Positions 3,044 through 31,148 of a DNA stretch of 36,810 nucleotides are shown piece after piece; the stretch's first letter is position 1; each line of letters starts with the position of its first letter. The translations under genes were made by a program, and so were the position numbers. Source of the DNA: Octopus bimaculoides (lineage: Eukaryota). The notes beneath the pieces are model-generated. The model worked only from the letters and a program-made list of their open reading frames with translations, did no database searches and was not told where the DNA came from. The DNA lies in the NCBI RefSeq assembly GCF_001194135.2, contig NC_068998.1:10597204-10634013 (forward strand), written 5' to 3'.

Positions 3044-3899
3044 GAACACAGAAAGAAATAAGGAGATAACTATTTGTACTTCCATGTATGTATGTATGTA
3101 TGTATGTATGTTTCGATGGACGGATGGATGGATGGATGGATGTATATATGTGAGTATGTATATACGTGCATACGTGTGAACATATGCATATAGAGAGAAA
3201 GACAGACAGATAACTAGGTATATAGATAGATAGTCATATAGATAGATAGTAACATACATGCAAAAATGCATGCATACATGCATACATACATACATACATA
3301 CATACATACATAAATGCGTACATACATACATACAAGTATACTACACACATACACATACAGTGTGCATGCCTGAATCACATGTATGTGTGTGTGTGCGTGT
3401 ATTTATATCTATAATAGACTCTTTATTCGTTTATTCGTCTACTAATCTAATTGACTGCCATATGTAAGGTGAGCGTACAATTTCAGAACATAGTGGCTTC
3501 AGTGAAAACAGATGAATGAACCAGCTAAAAGTGAGTAAAGAATAATAAACAAATTGGACGAATGGAATAGCGTTATTATAACAGAGTAACAAACAGAACG
3601 ACAGAATGGTAGAATAAACTACGTTTGAATAACTAAATAACATAATACTTAAATGAATGAATGAATAAATAAACGAATGAATGAATGAATGATTGAATCA
3701 ATGAAGTTTTGAATGAATTGAAGGAATAAGTGAATTGCAAATTTCTTTAAAACTGGAATAAAAGAATATTATAATGATGACTTGAGGACATTTTCCTCGC
3801 TTTACATATTGTAAGTTGGTATATTCTAGACAATTTGTCACGGCCATGGCTTGCAGAAACATGTTTAGAATACACCAAATGATTTATCTTTTATATTTA

Positions 3900-3985
3900 A
3901 CTTGCTTTAGTCATTGGACTACGGCCATGCTATAGCATCGCCTTGAAGGATTTCAGTGGAACAAATCGCCCCCTCCCAAGTAATT
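3900..3985 (-). mobile_element. SINE 3' tail fragment
   Basis: cttgctttagtcattggactacggccatgctatagcatcgcc matches the family A tail seen at 19578-19640. Confidence 0.6.
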
Positions 3986-7549: not shown

Positions 7550-7678
7550 GACAGGCTTCCTCAATTTCTGTCTACCAAATCCACTCACAAAGGCCTTGGT
7601 TGGCCCGGTGCTATAGTAAAAGACACTTACCCAAAGTGTCACGCAGTGGGACTGAATCCGGAACCATGTGATTGGAAA
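7548..7678 (-). mobile_element. SINE family A fragment
   Basis: gacaggcttcctcaatttctgtctaccaaatccactcacaagg...gacacttacccaaagtgtcacgcagtgggactgaatccggaaccatgtg, homologous to the other family A copies. Confidence 0.85.
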
Positions 7679-8906: not shown

Positions 8907-8936
8907 CCCTAACCCTAACACTAACCCTAACCCTAA
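8907..8936. repeat. interstitial (CCCTAA)5 telomere-like repeat
   Basis: ccctaa ccctaa cactaa ccctaa ccctaa. Confidence 0.8.
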
Positions 8937-11024
8937 TCCTCTAGTTACGCTACTGAACCGTTCTCTCTAGATCTTCTCTACATCATGCGCTTCCATATTT
9001 CTTTTTCATATAACCCTTCAGTCTAAATTCGTACACTGCTTAAGCATTCGTCCTTCTATCTGTTGATAAACTTCACTATGGAAGAGGGAAATTAAATAGA
9101 AAACCGTGTTAAAATAGCAAGTATAATAAATGACGTCTTGTAAATTAGCATAAATATCAATCAATTTCAAGACGCTTCTAATAATATTTCAACCATTCAT
9201 TTTTCTTCTTTTTTTTTCTCTCTCAGTTTCCCAACTCTTCATACAATTGTGATACACGTTTGACCTTATGGCCAGTTCTTGTTCCATTTGTCAGACATAC
9301 AGTTTGTTCTCAACGGATTAAATGTATTCCGAGGTAATGATAATGTCGAGGAAGCAATATTGTTTCCTTTATTTCCAAGGGGAAAATACATTAACACATT
9401 GTAGTCTCATTTAGGTGGAAACACTGATTTCTTGTAAAAATGATAAATCTATTCAAACTGGTTACAGTACACGTATTTCAGAGATTGATTTGTTTTGTTA
9501 TTCACAAAAGACATGAAAGACAAATTCTTACATTCTTCTCCTTTGTATGATAACATGATTTTGTTACATAGACACAAAGCCTGGGCAGAATAATCTATCA
9601 CAAATCTACTTGAGAAGAAATACTGCGTCATTTGATAATAAATAACAAGAATATTTTTATATTGGTTTTTAATGAAAATTGAATTGCTTTTAAATATCAG
9701 TTTCATGTTAAAAATGTAAATGTTATGTTATTAAATCATTTATTAGTTTTGTAAAAAAATATCAATCTTAGTAATTGCACATCGATGACTGAATCATGTC
9801 GAGTATTTTTGCATATTGCTTTAGAACCAGTTGCTGAAGAAAACAAATGCTAGTAACAATGGATTCTATTAAAGCGTGTTTCTGAACTTTAAATAGAAAA
9901 TTTATATTACAAAGAAACAGGAGCCCCTCCCTATACACGTCCCTGTATATTAGACACATATATACATATATATATGTATGTACGTTAAGAGCTTTTTAAG
10001 ATTTAAAAGATGATGAAAACAAATAAAAGATGCTTTCCTTCACAACTTTGCAACCAAGTAAGTGGCCGGTCAAAATTAACTCTAAATTAAAAAGGGAAAG
10101 AGAACATACACACATACATACATACATACATACATATATACATATATACATACAAGCATACATACATACATACACACACACTCACACACACGCATGCATA
10201 ATACATACATACATACATACATACATACAATTGAATTGTAGGCAGTGTAGAAAGAGAGTGCCTGCTCAATCTGAAGCTATAAATATTAATTAGTAAATAT
10301 AAAAATAAAAAGAGTTTCCAACTCATTATACAAAGTGCAATGTAAAACATAATATTCGATGTACGATTCTCCAACTGGTCATATTTCGATATCCACTGTC
10401 TTTCAAGTTTAATGTGTATATTAACGCGTAACGCTATCAACCACACAGGTCGTGTGTTTAGTTCCGTAGTACATAAAATACAGCTGAAATGCCGAAATAA
10501 ATTAAACTGCCTCCGTTAACTGTCATTACGGAGTGAAAGTGTCATTACTGGGCGAACATCCCGCTGAGTGTGTGTTCGCCTTTAATTATTGAACCTGGTT
10601 TAAGAGGCATTATATTTCATGTGAGTATAGTAATAAAGAACATTATAAACGTATATATATATATATATNNNNNNNNNNNNNNNNNNNNNNNNNNNNNNNN
10701 NNNNNNNNNNNNNNNNNNNNNNNNNNNNNNNNNNNNNNNNNNNNNNNNNNNNNNNNNNNNNNNNNNNNNNNNNNNNNNNNNNNNNNNNNNNNNNNNNNNN
10801 NNNNNNNNNNNNNNNNNNNNNNNNNNNNNNNNNNNNNNNNNNNNNNNNNNNNNNNNNNNNNNNNNNNNNNNNNNNNNNNNNNNNNNNNNNNNNNNNNNNN
10901 NNNNNNNNNNNNNNNNNNNNNNNNNNNNNNNNNNNNNNNNNNNNNNNNNNNNNNNNNNNNNNNNNNNNNNNNNNNNNNNNNNNNNNNNNNNNNNNNNNNN
11001 NNNNNNNNNNNNNNNNNNNNNNNN

Positions 11025-11072
<48 letters not shown>

Positions 11073-11504
11073 TCACGCAACTGTATCATAATATGTATGT
11101 CTACCATATTGTATGCAAGATAATATTTGTGTTTATTGATACGCGTATATAGCTACAATAGACTCAAAATTTGGTCAAATTACTTTCGATGATATGTATA
11201 CATGACGATGTGTGTGTGTGTGTGTGTATGTTTGTGTGTGTGTTTGAGTGCGCGCGCGTCTAACTAAATATGTTGCAGTATTGGCTCTTAGTGGTAAGAC
11301 CTTCTGTTCAGAATTTACTAATACCCAATGCTTGCTTTGAGTTGTTACTGACTGTATGTGCTAATACATACATACATACATACATATATCTATATATACA
11401 CACACATTCATGCGCACAAACACATATATACATGTGTATATCTATATCTATATCTATATCTATCTATCTATCTATCTCTATATCTATATATATATAAATG
11501 CATA

Positions 11505-11604
<100 letters not shown>

Positions 11605-12220
11605 CTGATCAATCAACGCTCGTTAGTATACAGTCACTATTAGTCTGAAACAAGATCAAAAGAAATATCTGTAATAAACGCGATAACAAAATTATTCGAT
11701 ACTTGCCAAAGAATACAACTGGGAGAAAATATTTTCTGTAGAATCTTACATTTATATGCAGTATAATGAGATTTTACGTGTTCATTCAACTCCTAGACAG
11801 AACATCCAAAACATTCCTCAAAATACTCAAAGCAAATTTTTATCTCGTAAAAGAAAAGAGAACGAATGATATATTGTTCTACATACATCTTGTTTGAAAA
11901 AGAAAACATATGGGACGGTCACGGCTGAAACGCTTTTATATATTATTCTGTTTTATTAGGGCTGCGCTGATTTATGAAAAAAAAAACAACTGTTCAAAAA
12001 ATGTACAATGGTTCTAAAGACCAAAATCTCGAAGGAGAATTACCAACCCTGAGACATGAATTCAAGGACTTGAACATAAGACTCCGTTACCAAAAGCGAC
12101 TGCAGAGAAGACATTTTTAACCACAATATTGTCTCTTTCCACGATATATTATCTTTAGTATATACTTGACGATATGTAGAAGAATCCATTCCGTGTACAT
12201 TAACGCCTGCAAGATACATC

Positions 12221-13290
12221 AACCACAAGCTTCAACAGAAGCAGTGATATCGACAAGCTCTACTTAAGAAGAGATGAAAGAAGTAGAAGGTTGAGAACAG
12301 TGCAGACAGCCTACGAATGTAGTACAGTATCTCTCAGACTGTATCTGCTAAACAGCTGCAGGAAAAAATAAATATATAAATCTAGTGTTGAAAAGCGAAG
12401 AGAACATCTAACGTGTCGGCAGTGAACTCTTCGGGATGCACTCCCTTCTTGACGACCTCTCATACAACCCACAAAACTACTGGATTCAAAGAAGACTTAA
12501 ATAGGAATGTTTCCCAAAGAATTGAAAGGAACCATCTCAGTAAAATAAGATTTTTCAATTATATTGGTCTAATAGGTGGACTAAAAAGAAAGAATCCGGC
12601 CATATTGTAATATAACTGAATGCAACCAGGAGAAAGAAATACTGAACGAATTATAAAGGTAAGTCATCAAGAATATAGCTTACGCAAATAAGTATGTTAT
12701 GAACACATCGTTGTAAAAGAGTTGTTTCCCTGTCTCGAATCACAAAAGCAATTAGCATATTCATGTTCGAATCTACCACAACGTATTAAGAATAAATGTG
12801 GAAGTCGTCATCGTACCCACCTTAAAATTTTCACTAAACCTGAAAGAAACCAGAATAATAGAACAGTTCCGAATATACGAATACAAAAAATGTTAACCTT
12901 ATACAGGAGACTGACAAAAACTATTGAAGATGAAACTGATACACTAAACTAGTTTACTATTACACGGACAAAATTTTGTTGCCAAGAATGAAGGCGCCCT
13001 CTAGGGGGAAAAAACTATAGGCCAATACGTTTGTTTAAACATTATGTATCAGATTTCCAGGAGCTGTTTAAACCAATTTCTCCGAGATCATTGCGTGTCT
13101 AACAATGTAATAATTTATGAATAAACAGGTGGAAACAATACAGTCTGAGGATGGGTTGAATAACGTTTAATTAATAAAGCTTCGCTGTCTCCGCTTTAAA
13201 ACACGCCACAGTAACTCTGCAAGAACTGCGTTTTCATTATAAAAAGGTCTTTAACTCTATTCCTCTCTAACGGCTACTAGACTGTTGCTT
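12221..13290 (+). mobile_element. old R4/Dong-clade (RLE) LINE remnant, post-RT region
   Basis: 12221-12430 translates TTSFNRSSDIDKLYLRRDERSRRLRTVQTAYECSTVSLRLYL, matching the R4-clade motif SDxDRLYLxRxxGGRGL. Weaker similarity follows (SCSNLPQR...RH; LQELRFHYKKVFNSIPL). There are many stops and frameshifts, and the 3' extent is uncertain. Confidence 0.55.
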
Positions 13291-13989
13291 TTGGTAAAAA
13301 GAAAATAACTCTATTTCTTTTACTATCTGAAAGGCTCACAAACACCTATTTTTTTTTTTATCATCTTCATACTAGAAAATGAAGTAAAACGTTTACACCT
13401 AATGTAAAACGTTTACNNNNNNNNNNNNNNNNNNNNNNNNNNNNNNNNNNNNNNNNNNNNNNNNNNNNNNNNNNNNNNNNNNNNNNNNNNNNNNNNNNNN
13501 NNNNNNNNNNNNNNNNNNNNNNNNNNNNNNNNNNNNNNNNNNNNNNNNNNNNNNNNNNNNNNNNNNNNNNNNNNNNNNNNNNNNNNNNNNNNNNNNNNNN
13601 NNNNNNNNNNNNNNNNNNNNNNNNNNNNNNNNNNNNNNNNNNNNNNNNNNNNNNNNNNNNNNNNNNNNNNNNNNNNNNNNNNNNNNNNNNNNNNNNNNNN
13701 NNNNNNNNNNNNNNNNNNNNNNNNNNNNNNNNNNNNNNNNNNNNNNNNNNNNNNNNNNNNNNNNNNNNNNNNNNNNNNNNNNNNNNNNNNNNNNNNGATT
13801 CTAACTTTCGCAGAAACTGTAATTTGATCAAACCGTCTCGAAAGGAAGGAAACTAGGCTAAAAGTCAGTGAATCTAGCCAATATTTTTAGAGTATCGCAT
13901 GGTATTACATGGCCAGCACTTTTTAAAAACCAATCAAGCACCATTTTTAATGTACGTCGCCTTTAGTAACAATTTAAAGGCCTATATTA

Positions 13990-14306
13990 CTGCAATTCCG
14001 TCGGTTACGAAGATAAGGTATCCAGTTCATCCGATCAATGGAACAACCTGCTCGTGAAAGGAACGAGCAAGTGGCTGAGTAGTCCACAGACACGCGTACC
14101 CTTAATGTATTTCTCGGGGAGATTTAGCATGAGACAATGTAACAAGACCGGCCCTTTGAATTGCAGGTAAATTCTTTTTTTTTACCAAGTGAGTAGACTG
14201 GAGCAATGTGATATAAAGTGTCTTGCTCAAGGACACAACGTGCAGCCAGGAATCGAACTTACAACGATCGCTTATTAACCTAACCACTAAGCCATGCGGC
14301 TTACCC
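13990..14306 (-). mobile_element. tRNA-derived SINE family C (V/Meta-like centre)
   Basis: Minus strand: gcatggcttagtggttag (A box), gttcgattcc (B box), gtgtccttgagcaagacactttatatcacattgctccagtc, then a distinct tail. Confidence 0.8.
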
Positions 14307-14386
14307 ATTATTAAAAGGCCTACACTAGAATGATTCAGTTACATTTCTGAGCACTAGGTTGATTTAACAACAATATATTCAGTTGA

Positions 14387-14441
14387 GATGATGATGATGG
14401 CGATGATGATGATGATGATGACGACGATGATGATGATGATG
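14387..14441. repeat. (GAT)n microsatellite
   Basis: Direct reading. Confidence 0.9.
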
Positions 14442-14849
14442 ACAGATTCTTCGTATCCGATGATCATTAGGAAGAGGTTGACACGCCCTCGAGTGTCCGT
14501 GTAAACCGATCCTCTACGCTGCTGGGTTTTTCTTCCTGCCTTCGTTTAGTGGTTTAAAAGTGAGAGCCCTACTCTCACACAATCCGATCTCACTCTTTAG
14601 ACTTGAAGGTCTGACCGCAGTGACTCAGTGGGGTAAATTAGCTCTGGTGACCAGTAAGGCGTAGGCCTTTACCTAGGCTGGAGAGCTCCATCTACCCTGG
14701 ATATACCGCAATGGTGTCAAAGAGAGCACCGGACTGCATGAAAAACACCACTCATCGATTTAGCTGTCAAGATTCACTCCCCAAACTTTTCTCTTTTCCA
14801 AGACACTCACAAAGCAGGTGATATACGGATGGATTTAACCACAACAAAT

Positions 14850-15258
14850 TCAGCTTATTATACGAATGGACTTAACGACAACAACAGCGTGTTCAACTGG
14901 TGAACGGATAAATTTACATTAATAACAAAATTTTCTGCTGATACGCGGATGGAATTCAGCCAGGGAAGATGTTTACTTTTAATAGACGGGAGACGGAATA
15001 TTACTTTCCAAGCCGAATAGACGCACGCCAATAACCTCTCTACTTTCTCCTTGTTCCAGACAATGTGAGCTATAAATACCTTGGTATTACTGAAAATGTA
15101 GTTTATAATGGAGATGTTGAGAAAATTAGAGTGACAAAAGAGTAATACATCAGGTTTTAACAAAATAAATGTATGTCAGTCGGAGCTTTCCTCTTGCGAG
15201 ACAATATCCTATAATGCACTTTCAGAACCAGTGTTGGTATTGACTATATTGACAGGCT
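14850..15258 (+). mobile_element. decayed R4/Dong-clade reverse transcriptase fragment (late RT motifs and thumb)
   Basis: In order: ITKFSADTRMEFSQGRC (cf. FSxDIxMEFGxDKC), SYKYLGITE, RVTKE*YIR, QSELSSCETISYNALSEPVL (cf. SELSAxNKxIAHNxFAVPVL). Frameshifted. Confidence 0.75.
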
Positions 15259-15386
15259 CCTTTTCTTTCTCTGTCTCTCTCACTCCTTTCTTCCTTCCTT
15301 CCTTCTTTCCTTCCTTCCTTCCTTCCTTCCTTTTGTTTCGTTCTCTCTCACTCACTCCCTCTCTTTATTATTATTATTGCGCACGC

Positions 15387-15458
<72 letters not shown>

Positions 15459-15491
15459 TATAATAATAATAATAATAACAATAATAATAAT
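15387..15491. repeat. (TAA)n microsatellite
   Basis: About 35 units. Confidence 0.95.
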
Positions 15492-15492
15492 G

Positions 15493-15613
15493 ATACGCAA
15501 AATACTTTCAATACAGTAACCATAAGAGCATCACAGCAAACCACAGCACATACGCAAGGCACAAAGAGCTGCGCTCGGTAGTGAAGTGAAAGCACGTTAA
15601 AAAAATAAAGCTA

Positions 15614-15616
<3 letters not shown>
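15493..15616 (+). mobile_element. extremely 5'-truncated Dong-like LINE 3' end inside (TAA)n
   Basis: About 124 bp of unique sequence between two TAA tracts. It begins with RKILSIQ*, resembling R4/Dong ORF C-termini (...HILRKxLS). A short 3' UTR with AATAAA follows, then (TAA)n. Confidence 0.6.

Positions 15617-15682
<66 letters not shown>
15617..15682. repeat. (TAA)n microsatellite
   Basis: About 22 units. Confidence 0.95.
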
Positions 15683-15700
15683 CCTTTCTGTTATATGCAT

Positions 15701-15885
15701 ATGGCCTGAAATTTGGTGGGAGGGGATAAGTCAATCACATCGACCCAGTACTTGACTGGTACTTATTTTAACGATCTCGAAAGGATGAAAGTAAGTCGAC
15801 TTCGGCGGAATTTGAACTCAGAGCATGAAGAAGGACGAAATACCGATAAGCATTTTGCCCGGTGTGCTAACGATTCTGCCAGCTA
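15701..15885 (-). mobile_element. SINE family B (Nin/Deu-like centre)
   Basis: Minus strand: agctggcagaatcgttagcacaccgggcaaaatgctt...ctgagttcaaattccgccgaagtcgac...tttcatcctttcgagatcg...aagtaccagtcaagtactgggtcgat. Confidence 0.88.
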
Positions 15886-18045: not shown

Positions 18046-18780
18046 NNNNNNNNNNNNNNNNNNNNNNNNNNNNNNNNNNNNNNNNNNNNNNNNNNNNNNN
18101 NNNNNNNNNNNNNNNNNNNNNNNNNNNNNNNNNNNNNNNNNNNNNNNNNNNNNNNNNNNNNNNNNNNNNNNNNNNNNNNNNNNNNNNNNNNNNNNNNNNN
18201 NNNNNNNNNNNNNNNNNNNNNNNNNNNNNNNNNNNNNNNNNNNNNNNNNNNNNNNNNNNNNNNNNNNNNNNNNNNNNNNNNNNNNNNNNNNNNNNNNNNN
18301 NNNNNNNNNNNNNNNNNNNNNNNNNNNNNNNNNNNNNNNNNNNNNNNNNNNNNNNNNNNNNNNNNNNNNNNNNNNNNNNNNNNNNNNNNNNNNNNNNNNN
18401 NNNNNNNNNNNNNNNNNNNNNNNNNNNNNNNNNNNNNNNNNNNNNNNNNNNNNNNNNNNNNNNNNNNNNNNNNNNNNNNNNNNNNNNNNNNNNNNNNNNN
18501 NNNNNNNNNNNNNNNNNNNNNNNNNNNNNNNNNNNNNNNNNNNNNNNNNNNNNNNNNNNNNNNNNNNNNNNNNNNNNNNNNNNNNNNNNNNNNNNNNNNN
18601 NNNNNNNNNNNNNNNNNNNNNNNNNNNNNNNNNNNNNNNNNNNNNNNNNNNNNNNNNNNNNNNNNNNNNNNNNNNNNNNNNNNNNNNNNNNNNNNNNNNN
18701 NATATATATATGTATGCATGTATATATATATTTGTATATATGTATATATATATATATCTATATATATATATATTATGTAT

Positions 18781-18864
18781 ATACATACGTACATACATAA
18801 TACATACGTACATACATACATACATACATACATACATACATACATACATACATACATACATACA
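18781..18864. repeat. (TACA)n microsatellite, 5' flank of the RLE LINE
   Basis: Direct reading. Confidence 0.9.
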
Positions 18865-19500
18865 ACACTGAAGATATCACCCACGTCATAAGCAGTTGTC
18901 CGAAAATGTCATCACGGTATTATCTACCGATGAGACATGATGTTGTTGCTAGGACACTCTAAAATGAAATCCGTCGGAAGGATAACCCCGAGGACAAAGA
19001 AATAAGAGCCCACAAATGGTAGAAGCCATAACCACTCATGATAAAAAGGAGTGCTGGAGGGATGTCCCTTTGAGGACCTCAATAAAATGTAAGCACAACA
19101 AACTTGATATAATGATTTGGGATATAAAAGAAAAACTGTGCACAATTGTGGAAAACAGCTGCCCAGCGAATGTTAACATAAAGCTGAAGATCAGTGATAA
19201 AGAGAACACTTATGCTGAACTATTGAGAAATCTGCGGTTACTCTATCCAGATTACAAATTCAGGTTTATTCCTGTAATTATTGGGGCCCTGGGATATGAA
19301 ACACTAATCTTGAGAAATTAGGCTTCTCAAAACCAGAAAGGAGAAAGCTAATTCGAAGGCTACAGATCCAATCCATCACTGGAACAGTAAAAATCTGTAA
19401 AACTTTCCAGAAGTTTATCATTTAAGTATACATGAGCATGTCTAGATATGCAACTATATGCATGAGAATACATACATAATGCAAAACATACAAATCTCCA
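18865..19500 (+). mobile_element. 5'-truncated R4/Dong-clade RLE LINE: zinc-knuckle end, RLE endonuclease, 3' UTR
   Basis: Reads TEDITHVISSCPKMSSRYYLPMRHDVVARTL (end of the CCHC knuckle plus RH motif), then HNKLDIMIWD...CTIVENSCPANVNIKLKISDKENTYAELLRNLRLLYPDYKFRFIPVIIGALG (PD-(D/E)xK-type RLE). It ends LGFSKPERRKLIRRLQIQSITGTVKICKTFQKFII* at 19425, followed by a ~75 bp UTR and TACA repeats. It has one premature stop and two frameshifts. Confidence 0.92.
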
Positions 19501-19574
19501 CCTACATACATACATGCATACATACACGCACACACATATACACATACACACATATATATATACATACATATATA

Positions 19575-20046
19575 CTCTTTTACTCTTTTACTTGTTTCAG
19601 TCATTTGACTGCGGCCATGCTGGAGCAACGCCTTTAGTCGAGCAAATTGACCCCAGGACTTATTCTTTGAAAGCGTAGTACTTATTCCATCNNNNNNNNN
19701 NNNNNNNNNNNNNNNNNNNNNNNNNNNNNNNNNNNNNNNNNNNNNNNNNNNNNNNNNNNNNNNNNNNNNNNNNNNNNNNNNNNNNNNNNNNNNNNNNNNN
19801 NNNNNNNNNNNNNNNNNNGGGGGGGGGGGGACAAACACAGATACACAAACACATATACACACATACATAAATATATATACATATATACAACGGGCTTCTT
19901 TCAGTTTTCGTCTACCAAATCCGCTCACATGGCTTTGGTCGGCCCGAGGCTATAGTAGAAGACACTTGCCCAAGGTGCCACACAGTGGGAATGAACCCGG
20001 AACCATGTGGTTGGTAAGCAAGCTACTTACCACACAGCCACTCCTG
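19575..20046 (-). mobile_element. SINE family A, full length (spans a 127-N gap)
   Basis: Head ggagtggctgtgtggtaagtagcttgc, ggttcattcccactgtgtggcaccttgggcaagtgtcttc; tail ggcgttgctccagcatggccgcagtcaaatgactgaaacaag plus (TAAAAGAG)2. Confidence 0.92.
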
Positions 20047-20115
20047 TGCCTGTATATATATACATATATATATATACATACATGTATACATTTACACATA
20101 CATACATATATGGAC

Positions 20116-23040: not shown

Positions 23041-23150
23041 TAGGCACATGGTTCCGAACACTTTGGGCAACTGTCTTCTACTATAGCCTCGGGTCAACCA
23101 AAGCTTTGTGAATGTATTTGGTAGACGGAAACTGAAAGAAGACGTTTATG
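23041..23150 (+). mobile_element. SINE family A fragment
   Basis: cacatggttccgaacactttgggcaactgtcttctactatagcctcggg...ggtagacggaaactgaaagaag. Confidence 0.8.
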
Positions 23151-26872: not shown

Positions 26873-27065
26873 GTTGCAGATGTGTAGTAAGAAGTTTGTT
26901 TCTCAACCACATGGTTCCGGGTTCAGTCTCACTGCGTGGCACCTTGGACAAGTGTTTTCTATTATAGCATCGGGCCGACCAAGGCCTTGTGAGTAGATTT
27001 GGTAGACGGAAACTGAAAGAAGCCTGTCGCATATGTATATCTATCTATCTATCTATCTATTTTTG

Positions 27066-28789: not shown

Positions 28790-28950
28790 GGCGGAAAGCG
28801 TGAGCCATATGCGCCCGTGCACGTGTCTTTGTGTTTTCTCCACCATCACAATGCTTGATAACCGGTATTGGTTCGTTTACGTCCCTGTAATTTAACGAAG
28901 GCGGTACCTCAACATGACTACAGTTCAATGACTAAAACAAGTAAAAGATA
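28790..28950 (+). mobile_element. SINE family A 3' half with internal deletion
   Basis: tgcttgataaccggtattggttcgtttacgtccctgtaa, joined to aaggcggtacctcaacatgactacag...aaacaagtaaaaga. Confidence 0.75.
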
Positions 28951-30680: not shown

Positions 30681-30788
30681 AGCTTGTAATGACTTTTCTT
30701 TTTTCAAAAATGTTTCTCAAAAAAAAAACCTTACTAATAGTTCTCTAATGGTTCTCATCGATTATCCTTTTTTTTAAATTTTTTTTAC

Positions 30789-31148
30789 ATGTTTCCCTCA
30801 TTGGGCTGCGGCCATGCTGGGATATCGTCTTGAAGGATTTTAGTCAATCAGATCAACACTAGTACTTTGTGAAAGTCTGGTACTTATTACATAGGTGTCT
30901 TTTGCTGAACCGCTAAATTAAGGAGAGCATAAACATGCACCAACACTGGTTGTGAAGCGCTGGGGAAGAGTGCGCACACACACATAAGACAGGCTTCCGC
31001 ACAGTTTCAGTGTACCAAATTTACAAGACATTGGTCTGCTCGGGGTTATAATAGATGATGCTTGCTCAGGTGTGCAAGCCATGCAGTGGTACTGAAACCA
31101 AAACGACGAGGTCGCAAAGCGAATTTCTTAAATTCACAGCCATGCCTA
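30789..31148 (-). mobile_element. SINE family A, old, near full length
   Basis: Tail gctgcggccatgctgg, gctgaaccgctaa, gacaggcttcc...cagtttcagtgtaccaaat; head cacagccatgcc. Confidence 0.8.

What the first reader, a model, noticed from the sequence alone, without database searches (positions are those of the whole stretch)
18781..19525. RLE retrotransposon sitting inside (TACA)n: possible new microsatellite target specificity
Seen: a clear R4/Dong-type knuckle, RLE and 3' UTR fragment. Its truncated 5' junction abuts ~20 TACA units (taca|acactgaag), and its 3' end runs into TACA repeats again. Known: RLE LINEs are often sequence-specific, and Dong targets (TAA)n. I do not recall a described (TACA)n-specific family but cannot check. 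Inference: the endonuclease may cut TACA/TATG arrays, or its tail may seed them. Either could help explain why TACA tracts are so common in this window.
Basis: partly seen in the sequence, partly recalled or inferred. Interest (0 to 1): 0.75.

Follow-up and report, generated by a model that had tools for sequence, protein, structure and literature searches.

The report
Dead Dong-like LINE in (ACAT)n repeat
This is a broken, front-truncated copy of a very abundant octopus jumping gene whose relatives nearly always sit inside ACAT/TACA simple repeats, so the family most likely targets that repeat, a new target for a known kind of element.

Summary
Window 18864-19502 (+) is a decayed, 5'-truncated C-terminal piece of a single-ORF LINE with a restriction-like endonuclease (RLE). 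It keeps half of the CCHC knuckle, the RLE domain and a 77-bp 3' UTR. (ATAC)x21 lies directly upstream and a degenerate (TACA)n tract downstream.

The family is very high-copy in four coded species, with the 5'-to-3' depth rise typical of LINEs. The start of the ACAT tail belongs to the family consensus.

The target idea was tested on related copies from two Octopus species, Argonauta and unidentified marine eukaryotes:
- ACAT lineage: 6 of 7 clearly readable 5' junctions, at different truncation points or full length, abut an (ACAT)n array on the element's strand. Every visible 3' end starts with ACAT units.
- Sister lineage: (ACTT)n tails, and (ACTT)n at 6 of 6 5' junctions.
- Background: perfect (ACAT)n covers 1.5% of the window.

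So (ACAT)n-directed integration, as Dong does with (TAA)n, is well supported. Four points are not:
- This family does not explain the window's many TACA tracts. Only this one array pair adjoins a copy.
- R4/Dong clade membership was not tested by phylogeny.
- Novelty against Repbase/Dfam could not be checked.
- No empty site was seen.

The parts
18781..18863 (+). (ATAC)n array of about 21 units directly upstream of the element. Read as the upstream remainder of the (ACAT)n target array. Further upstream are an AT/TATG-rich microsatellite (18702-18780) and an N gap (18046-18701).
   Evidence: TRF 18781-18864, 21.2 copies, 92% matches.
18864..19425 (+). Decayed, 5'-truncated C-terminal ORF fragment. 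It keeps the second half of the CCHC knuckle (H 18882-18884, C 18897-18899), the RYYLPxRHD motif, the RLE motifs HNK[P>L]D (18094... see 19094-19108) and VE-x-SCPA[D>N]VN (19148-19177), and the C-terminal tail ending TVKICKTFQKFII with stop TAA at 19423-19425. It has three in-frame stops, two frame changes and a 13-bp deletion near 19298.
   Evidence: alignment to intact relatives; family majority letters restore Y at 18962, P at 19104 and D at 19169. The loose-end consensus AACCGATGCAGACTTTGTGGAGTTAACACC before 18870 shows other copies continue upstream.
19426..19502 (+). 77-bp 3' UTR of the element. The family consensus ends ...AAATCTGCAC and then runs into ACATAC...
   Evidence: 19498 C>G and 19502 C>A in the majority of 90-127 contigs per run; many contigs stop at 19501; 87% identity to the O. 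vulgaris copy L001.
19503..19575 (+). Degenerate (TACA)n / ACAY tract. It is the element's 3' tail merged with any downstream remainder of the target array. It ends at the 3' end of an antisense SINE.
   Evidence: TRF period 4, 17.8 copies, 74% matches.

Best explanation
The locus holds a dead, 5'-truncated insertion of a high-copy octopus LINE. The element type has a single ORF with a central reverse transcriptase, a C-terminal CCHC knuckle and a PD-(D/E)xK restriction-like endonuclease, with no APE domain and no N-terminal zinc finger. That is Dong/R4-like architecture.

The lineage carries an (ACAT)n 3' tail and integrates by target-primed reverse transcription into (ACAT)n.(ATGT)n arrays in one orientation. 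The proposed steps, all inferred, are:
1. The RLE nicks the bottom strand in or at the downstream edge of the array.
2. The (ACAU)n end of the RNA pairs with the exposed (ATGT)n DNA end and primes cDNA synthesis.
3. Reverse transcription often stops early.
4. The truncated 5' end is joined to the upstream part of the array, sometimes with 1-3 nt of microhomology.

In the window this left (ATAC)x21 | element 18864-19502 | (TACA)n. This copy lacks the whole RT and has stops, frameshifts and mutated catalytic residues, so it does nothing now.

Shown here: the anatomy, the copy number and 5'-to-3' depth gradient, the tail start in the family consensus, and same-repeat, same-strand arrays at independent 5' junctions in two sister lineages.

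Inferred: the nick position, tail-target pairing, and which protein part reads the repeat.
For: Anatomy and homology:
- Searches give the fragment and its motifs.
- Full-length relatives have RVT_1 (E 1e-23 to 1e-25), F[FY]VDD, CRLC-x8-H-x5-C, (K/R)PD and E-x-SCP, with no C2H2 pattern in the N-terminal 420 aa.
- The RT is closest to solved R2 proteins (E 1.6e-21).

Abundance and tail:
- Depth rises from about 5e4 to about 2.2e6 toward the 3' end in 4 runs of 3 coded species; word matches place the family in a fourth.
- Majority letters make ...CTGCACATACATAC at 19498-19505.

5' junctions in the ACAT lineage:
- Window: (ATAC)x21.
- L001 (O. vulgaris): (CCAT)n-ACATACATAC | element starting at aa ~1084. 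The tail ACATx4.5 is followed by unique DNA.
- L003: 175-bp (ACAT)n | aa ~872.
- L010: 200-bp (CATA)n | aa ~850.
- L005: full length, with (CATA)x18 at the 5' end and (ACAT)n at the 3' end.
- L022: full length, (CATA)x41 preceded by unique DNA.
- Argonauta L021: ACAT/AC tail, with an array about 0.8 kb upstream of the ATG.

ACTT lineage: L006, L007, L011, L015A, L015B and L017 all have (ACTT)n at the 5' junction. The four visible tails are (ACTT)n.

Orientation and background: in loci oriented on the element, every ACAT or ACTT array is on the element's strand and none on the other. Window background is 1.49%.

Precedent: Dong targets (TAA)n, Togen (TG)n, and most RLE clades are target-specific.
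Against: - The sample is small: 13 readable 5' junctions, only three of them from Octopus (Argonauta L021's junction could not be placed). It was found through gene calls and metagenome contigs, not through a genome-wide census.
- One Octopus copy (L002) has no array at its 5' end.
- In L001, L003, L010 and L021 only 2.5-6 repeat units follow the element before unique DNA. Insertion would then have to be at the array's downstream edge, or the upstream arrays arose or grew otherwise.
- No empty (pre-insertion) site was seen.
- Short-read assemblies break at microsatellites. Contigs that begin or end in the repeat (L005, L007, L017) are therefore partly a sampling effect.
- No biochemical evidence on the endonuclease.
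Confidence: 0.78

Rival explanations
1. Tail only. (ACAT)n is merely the element's 3' tail. The arrays at 5' junctions are tails of other retrocopies (earlier LINE or SINE insertions, or RNAs joined by RT template jumping), not a sequence recognised as a target.
For: - In L003 the upstream array is the tail of a tRNA-derived SINE.
- In L015, copy B starts right after the tail of copy A.
- Short tails are followed by unique DNA in L001, L003 and L010.
- R2-type RTs are known, from general knowledge, to jump between templates.
Against: - Upstream arrays are preceded by unique, non-element DNA in L022, L010, L011, L006 and L001.
- Even insertion into other elements' tails is insertion into (ACAT)n. 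This rival therefore differs mainly in what supplies the arrays.
- The same-strand rule holds 12 of 12 times.
Confidence: 0.12
2. Chance or passive association. The genome is so rich in microsatellites that a LINE fragment between two TACA tracts is coincidence, or elements simply accumulate in repeat-rich, low-recombination DNA, as proposed for Drosophila Waldo-A/B near CA repeats.
For: - The window has about 23 perfect ACAT-type arrays and many other microsatellites.
- The passive-accumulation idea appears.
Against: - Perfect arrays cover only 1.5% (+) and 0.6% (-) of the window.
- Abutment is direct, to the base.
- It recurs in 12 of 13 junctions across several species and always on the element's strand.
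- The repeat type switches to ACTT exactly in the families whose own tail is ACTT.
Confidence: 0.04
3. Same mechanism but a different clade. The family is a microsatellite-specific member of HERO or another RLE clade, not of R4/Dong.
For: - Some HERO families are reported to target microsatellites.
- No reference R4/Dong/HERO sequences were available, and database hits carry no clade names.
Against: - Published Octopus annotations find Dong-R4 to be the abundant RLE group: 5 active families and 1129 near-full-length insertions of about 4.2 kb in O. vulgaris, against 13 for Hero and 1 for R2.
- That matches this family's very high copy number and the 4.3-4.9 kb size of full-length relatives. 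This link is inference, not a test.
Confidence: 0.2

Closest known systems
Dong (Bombyx mori; also DongAg, DongBg), R4 clade RLE LINE
   Same: Single-ORF RLE LINE. Its simple-repeat 3' tail equals the microsatellite it inserts into, and copies are often 5'-truncated. A mollusc member (DongBg) is known.
   Different: Dong's repeat is (TAA)n. Here it is the tetranucleotide (ACAT)n, with (ACTT)n in sister families. Clade membership of the present family was not tested by phylogeny.
Waldo (WaldoAg1/2, WaldoFs1), R1 clade
   Same: Targets essentially the same repeat, (ACAY)n.
   Different: Waldo uses an N-terminal APE endonuclease. The present family has a C-terminal RLE and no APE domain. This is convergence on the target, not relatedness.
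Togen (fish), NeSL-related RLE LINEs
   Same: RLE LINEs specific for a microsatellite, (TG)n.
   Different: Different clade features (NeSL-type N-terminal zinc fingers, from general knowledge) and a dinucleotide target.
R2 (28S rDNA-specific RLE LINE; solved structures 9nl2, 8gh6)
   Same: Nearest solved RT (E 1.6e-21). Same order of RT, CCHC knuckle and RLE. It is the TPRT paradigm used for the mechanism proposed here.
   Different: R2 has N-terminal zinc-finger/Myb DNA-binding domains and a single rDNA site. None were found here, and the target is a microsatellite.
Octopus 'Dong-R4' LINE families in published repeat annotations
   Same: Same host genus, same RLE group, high copy number and recent activity. 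This family is very probably one of them.
   Different: Those papers report abundance and activity only. No tail or target-site description was found in them.

Membership tests
R4/Dong clade of RLE non-LTR retrotransposons | Single ORF with a central RT followed by a C-terminal CCHC knuckle and a PD-(D/E)xK restriction-like endonuclease; no APE domain | tested here: met
   Full-length relatives L005, L006, L007, L021 and L022 have RVT_1, F[FY]VDD, CRLC-x8-H-x5-C, (K/R)PD and E-x-SCP, with no Exo_endo_phos hit. The window fragment keeps only the C-terminal part.
R4/Dong clade of RLE non-LTR retrotransposons | No N-terminal zinc-finger/Myb DNA-binding domains (distinguishes it from R2, NeSL and CRE; recalled from general knowledge) | tested here: inconclusive
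   No Pfam domain and no C2H2 pattern in the N-terminal 420 aa, which hold 5-7 Cys. This is negative evidence only, and HERO is not excluded by it.
R4/Dong clade of RLE non-LTR retrotransposons | RT-domain phylogeny groups it with Dong, R4 and Rex6 references | not testable with these tools
   No reference sequences or Repbase/Dfam were available, and the homologues returned are unnamed. Indirect support: Dong-R4 is the dominant RLE group annotated in Octopus.
Microsatellite-specific LINE (Dong-like behaviour) | 3' tail made of the same simple repeat as the flanking target | tested here: met
   ACAT tails in the window, L001, L003, L005, L010, L016 and L021. ACTT tails in L011, L015A, L015B and L017. 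The tail start is in the family consensus.
Microsatellite-specific LINE (Dong-like behaviour) | Independent 5' junctions (different truncation points) abut the same repeat on the same strand, far above background | tested here: met
   12 of 13 readable junctions do, with L002 the exception. Background is 1.5% or less. All arrays lie on the element's strand. The sample is small and not a census.
Microsatellite-specific LINE (Dong-like behaviour) | Empty sites show an uninterrupted array; the endonuclease cleaves the repeat | not testable with these tools
   No octopus genome search is available. Read laying accepts only the window, whose flanks are repeats and an N gap.
Waldo / R1 clade ((ACAY)n-specific APE LINEs) | N-terminal apurinic/apyrimidinic-like endonuclease | tested here: not met
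   No APE/Exo_endo_phos domain; the endonuclease is a C-terminal RLE.
R2 | 28S rDNA target with N-terminal ZF/Myb; 5' HDV-like ribozyme in many members | tested here: not met
   Flanks are microsatellites, not rDNA. No N-terminal ZF/Myb. No ribozyme family hit in five full-length loci at E<=0.1.

The most novel reading that the evidence does not exclude
In this clade of Dong-like RLE LINEs, the target microsatellite tracks the element's own 3' tail repeat. ACAT-tailed families sit in (ACAT)n and ACTT-tailed sister families sit in (ACTT)n, a one-base difference in the unit. Target choice may therefore be set largely by base pairing between the RNA tail and the nicked DNA, not by protein recognition. 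If so, the insertion site would be re-programmable by changing the tail, and neither target has been described for RLE elements.
Probability: 0.3. Interest if true: 0.65.

Novelty: new member of a known kind. Interest (0 to 1): 0.45.

Why it matters
Microsatellite-specific LINEs are rare and are natural examples of 'safe-harbour' insertion. RLE elements such as R2 are currently being engineered for targeted DNA insertion.

A widespread marine-invertebrate clade whose families hit (ACAT)n or (ACTT)n according to their own tail would be a compact comparative system. It could show how an RLE LINE chooses and changes its target.

For octopus genomics, it means a major, recently active LINE group is not randomly distributed. 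It is tied to one microsatellite class. That matters for interpreting insertion maps, somatic-retrotransposition claims and assembly gaps.

For this particular window the element is an inert fossil.

Tried and rejected
- **Census of 5' junctions from public reads.** Read laying shows only the best-supported 6-24 rows. Those are places where the window copy has private indels, not true junctions. Logan contigs also break at microsatellites.
- **Idea that the neighbouring octopus SINE carries a (TGTA)n tail that supplied the target.** Rejected. Three other copies of that SINE end in the window have no such tail.
- **Idea that other TACA arrays in the window are tails of very short copies.** Rejected. 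There is no 3' UTR match next to any of them.
- **Pfam on the fragment alone** gave nothing significant.
- **Rfam.** No ribozyme in the 5' UTRs, only sub-threshold mir-297 hits caused by the repeat itself, and nothing in the window at gathering scores.
- **Scans of bacterial/archaeal genome contigs and viral contigs** for stray copies found none.
- **Naming the clade from database names.** All homologues are unnamed or 'hypothetical'.
- **Literature searches** for an (ACAT)n-specific R4/Dong/RLE element found none. Repbase, Dfam and Kojima & Fujiwara 2004 itself could not be read.
- **L004, L008, L009 and L012-L014** were uninformative. The contigs are too short, or the 3' UTR is cut by a SINE.
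- **An NJ tree of 190 C-terminal residues** separates most ACTT families but does not resolve the ACAT ones. It is not used as evidence of monophyly.

Full report
**1. What is in the window**

Reading 18300-20100 and running TRF give this order:
- an N gap (18046-18701);
- an AT/TATG-rich microsatellite (18702-18780);
- an (ATAC)n array of 21.2 units at 92% matches (18781-18864);
- about 640 bp of unique sequence;
- a degenerate period-4 TACA tract (19503-19575, 17.8 units at 74% matches);
- the end of an antisense SINE (from 19576).

The unique part translates in three frames on the + strand. It reads EDITHVISSCPKMSSRYYLPMRHD ... HNKLDIMIWD ... VENSCPANVN ... FIPVIIGALGY ... TVKICKTFQKFII*, with the stop at 19423-19425. 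A 77-bp 3' UTR follows.

This conceptual protein finds 35 relatives with E values from 3.5e-7 down to 1e-64. Three are named Octopus proteins, two from O. bimaculoides and one from O. vulgaris. Pfam on the fragment alone gives nothing significant.

**2. What kind of element it is**

Related loci fetched from metagenome and genome assemblies contain intact single ORFs of 1150-1213 aa (L005, L006, L007, L022 and Argonauta hians L021). These ORFs have:
- a central RVT_1 domain (E 1e-23 to 1e-25) with F[FY]VDD;
- a C-terminal CRLC-x8-H-x5-C knuckle;
- (K/R)PD and E-x-SCP-x-D motifs of a PD-(D/E)xK restriction-like endonuclease.

They have no APE domain and no C2H2 pattern in the first 420 residues. 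The RT is closest to solved R2 proteins (E 1.6e-21). This is the Dong/R4-type architecture.

The window fragment aligns to the last 185 or so residues only. It starts inside the knuckle, so the CxxC half is missing.

**3. The copy is dead**

It has three in-frame stops, two frame changes, KPD>KLD and PAD>PAN. Laying contigs of public runs on it shows that the family majority has Y at 18962, P at 19104 and D at 19169. The majority also carries 13 extra bases at about 19298. So one of the stops, both substitutions and the deletion are shown to be private decay of this copy; the other two stops and the first frame change were not checked this way.

The same data show that other copies continue upstream of 18870. 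The loose-end consensus there is ...CRLCGVNT in DNA form, from 32 contigs, so the 5' truncation is real.

**4. Abundance and the tail**

Sequencing runs of four coded organisms hold the family's words. In 4 runs of 3 of them (organisms A, B, C), summed contig depth rises from about 5e4 in the upstream part to about 2.2e6 near the 3' end. This is the classic profile of a 5'-truncating LINE. Most contigs are 90-95% identical to the window copy.

At 19498 and 19502 the majority letters give ...ATCTGCACATACATAC. The start of the ACAT tail therefore belongs to the family consensus and is not peculiar to this locus.

Published annotations report Dong-R4 as an abundant, recently active LINE group in Octopus. 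They count 5 active families and 1129 near-full-length insertions averaging about 4.2 kb in O. vulgaris. Full-length relatives here measure 4.3-4.9 kb. That this family is one of those annotated families is an inference, not a test.

**5. Test of the target hypothesis**

I collected every related copy I could reach and read both junctions.

ACAT lineage:

| Copy | 5' junction | 3' end |
|---|---|---|
| window | (ATAC)x21, truncated at about aa 973 (L005 numbering) | (TACA)n tract |
| L001 (O. vulgaris chromosome) | (CCAT)n-ACATACATAC, aa ~1084 | ACATx4.5, then unique DNA |
| L003 | 175-bp (ACAT)n, aa ~872, 'AC' microhomology | ACATACATACAC, then unique DNA |
| L010 | 200-bp (CATA)n, aa ~850 | ACATx3, then unique DNA |
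| L005 | full length, (CATA)x18 | (ACAT)n after a 600-bp 3' UTR |
| L022 | full length, (CATA)x41 preceded by unique DNA | not reached |
| L021 (Argonauta) | array about 0.8 kb upstream of the ATG; junction uncertain | ACATAC(AC)n |
| L016 | not visible | ACATACAT followed by (ACAG)n |
| L002 (O. bimaculoides) | abuts a C2H2 zinc-finger-like ORF, no array | missing |

L002 is the one exception.

Sister lineage, 45-60% identical in the C-terminal domain: L006, L007, L011, L015A, L015B and L017 all have (ACTT)n directly at the 5' junction. The four visible tails are (ACTT)n.

Overall, 12 of 13 readable 5' junctions abut the repeat that also forms that element's tail. The junctions are at different truncation points or at a conserved 5' UTR start. 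A GAGGA(C/A)GGAGCTC motif lies 10-20 nt after the array in both L022 and L011.

With every locus oriented on its element, all ACAT or ACTT arrays lie on the element's strand and none on the other. Background coverage of perfect (ACAT)>=3 is 1.49% (+) and 0.61% (-) in the window. Chance or passive co-location is therefore very unlikely.

**6. Mechanism**

By analogy with R2 and Dong (established knowledge), the best reading is target-primed reverse transcription into (ACAT)n.(ATGT)n:
1. The RLE nicks the bottom strand.
2. The (ACAU)n RNA end pairs with the (ATGT)n DNA end.
3. cDNA synthesis proceeds and often aborts.
4. The 5' end is joined to the upstream array.

Two observations shape the details. 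First, in L001, L003, L010 and L021 only 2.5-6 units follow the element before unique DNA, while the upstream array can be 50 units. This suggests nicking near the downstream edge of arrays, for example by a protein bound to upstream repeats and cutting at a distance, as the upstream R2 subunit does. Later growth of the long pure upstream array is an alternative. Second, target and tail co-vary between sister lineages (ACAT versus ACTT, one base apart). This fits a large role for tail-target pairing. Both points are inference.

The main rival is that the upstream arrays are tails of other retrocopies. That fits L003 (SINE tail) and L015B (behind L015A's tail). It does not fit L022, L010, L011, L006 or L001, where unique DNA precedes the array. 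No empty site could be examined.

**7. What is not supported**

The family does not explain the abundance of TACA tracts in this window. BLAST finds no second copy. None of the other roughly 20 ACAT-type arrays is preceded by the family's 3' UTR.

Several CA/TA-rich tracts belong instead to an internal microsatellite of a tRNA-derived SINE, present in many copies. My own idea that this SINE's tail supplied the target was rejected, because other copies lack such a tail.

**8. Comparison with known elements and novelty**

Microsatellite targets in the searchable literature are:
- Dong (TAA)n, in the R4 clade, including a mollusc member;
- Togen (TG)n, NeSL-related;
- some HERO families;
- Waldo (ACAY)n and Mino (AC)n, R1 clade, APE-type;
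- Kibi (TC)n and Koshi (TTC)n, Tx1 clade.

I found no RLE element described as (ACAT)n- or (ACTT)n-specific. The octopus repeat papers do not describe tails or targets. Repbase and Dfam could not be consulted.

The element works like Dong with a different repeat, and converges on Waldo's target with a different endonuclease. Membership of the R4/Dong clade is met on architecture and tail behaviour but untested by RT phylogeny.

I rate it a new member of a known kind. It is of moderate interest as a family-level finding and of low interest as a locus, since this copy is an inert fossil.

Noticed in passing
window 19576-19691 and 19819-20052 (- strand); other copies near 1636-1787, 1932-2308, 3887-3944, 7561-7678, 23059-23140, 26881-27021, 28898-28948, 30783-30820: A tRNA-derived octopus SINE is present in many copies. 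It has a tRNA-like head, an internal variable CA/TA microsatellite plus a G-run, and a body ending ...CAAGTAAAAGAGTAAAAGA. Its internal microsatellite accounts for several ACAC/ATAT-type tracts of the window. It has no consistent (TGTA)n tail.
   Followed up: partly
L003 7510-7920: A tRNA-derived SINE with an (ATAC)n tail lies directly upstream of the 5'-truncated LINE copy, on the same strand. It could be a non-autonomous partner sharing the LINE's tail repeat, or simply the supplier of the target array.
   Followed up: no
L015 8847-15965: Two copies of the ACTT lineage lie head to tail. A full-length copy (about 11390-15838) starts immediately after the compound (ACTT/GCTT/CCTT)n tail of a 5'-truncated copy (8908-11388). 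This is as expected if tails of earlier copies serve as targets.
   Followed up: partly
L022 ~4630, L011 ~7060, L015 ~11405: A conserved motif, GAGGA(C/A)GGAGCTC (GAGGCAGGACGG in L015B), lies 10-20 nt after the upstream array in full-length copies of both lineages. It is a possible promoter or processing signal at the true 5' end. Rfam gave no ribozyme hit.
   Followed up: partly
L016 ~975-1028; L021 ~13563-13590; L001 6070-6150: Compound arrays occur at element ends: ACATACAT followed by (ACAG)n, ACATAC(AC)n, and (CCAT)n followed by only 2.5 ACAT units. The repeat requirement may be looser (ACAN/ACAY-like) than pure ACAT.
   Followed up: no
window 8907-8940: An interstitial telomere-like (CCCTAA)x5.7 repeat. 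A similar (ACCCTA)n lies in the Argonauta locus L021 at 19797-19820.
   Followed up: no
window 13029-13178: A weak reverse-transcriptase-like fragment (44% identity to L005 residues 470-519) next to an N gap. It is probably another decayed LINE.
   Followed up: no
L005 3-75 and 4467-4539; L022 4499-4571: The (ACAT)n arrays give sub-threshold Rfam hits to mir-297 on the opposite strand (43-44 bits against a gathering score of 90). This is a repeat artefact, not a miRNA.
   Followed up: yes
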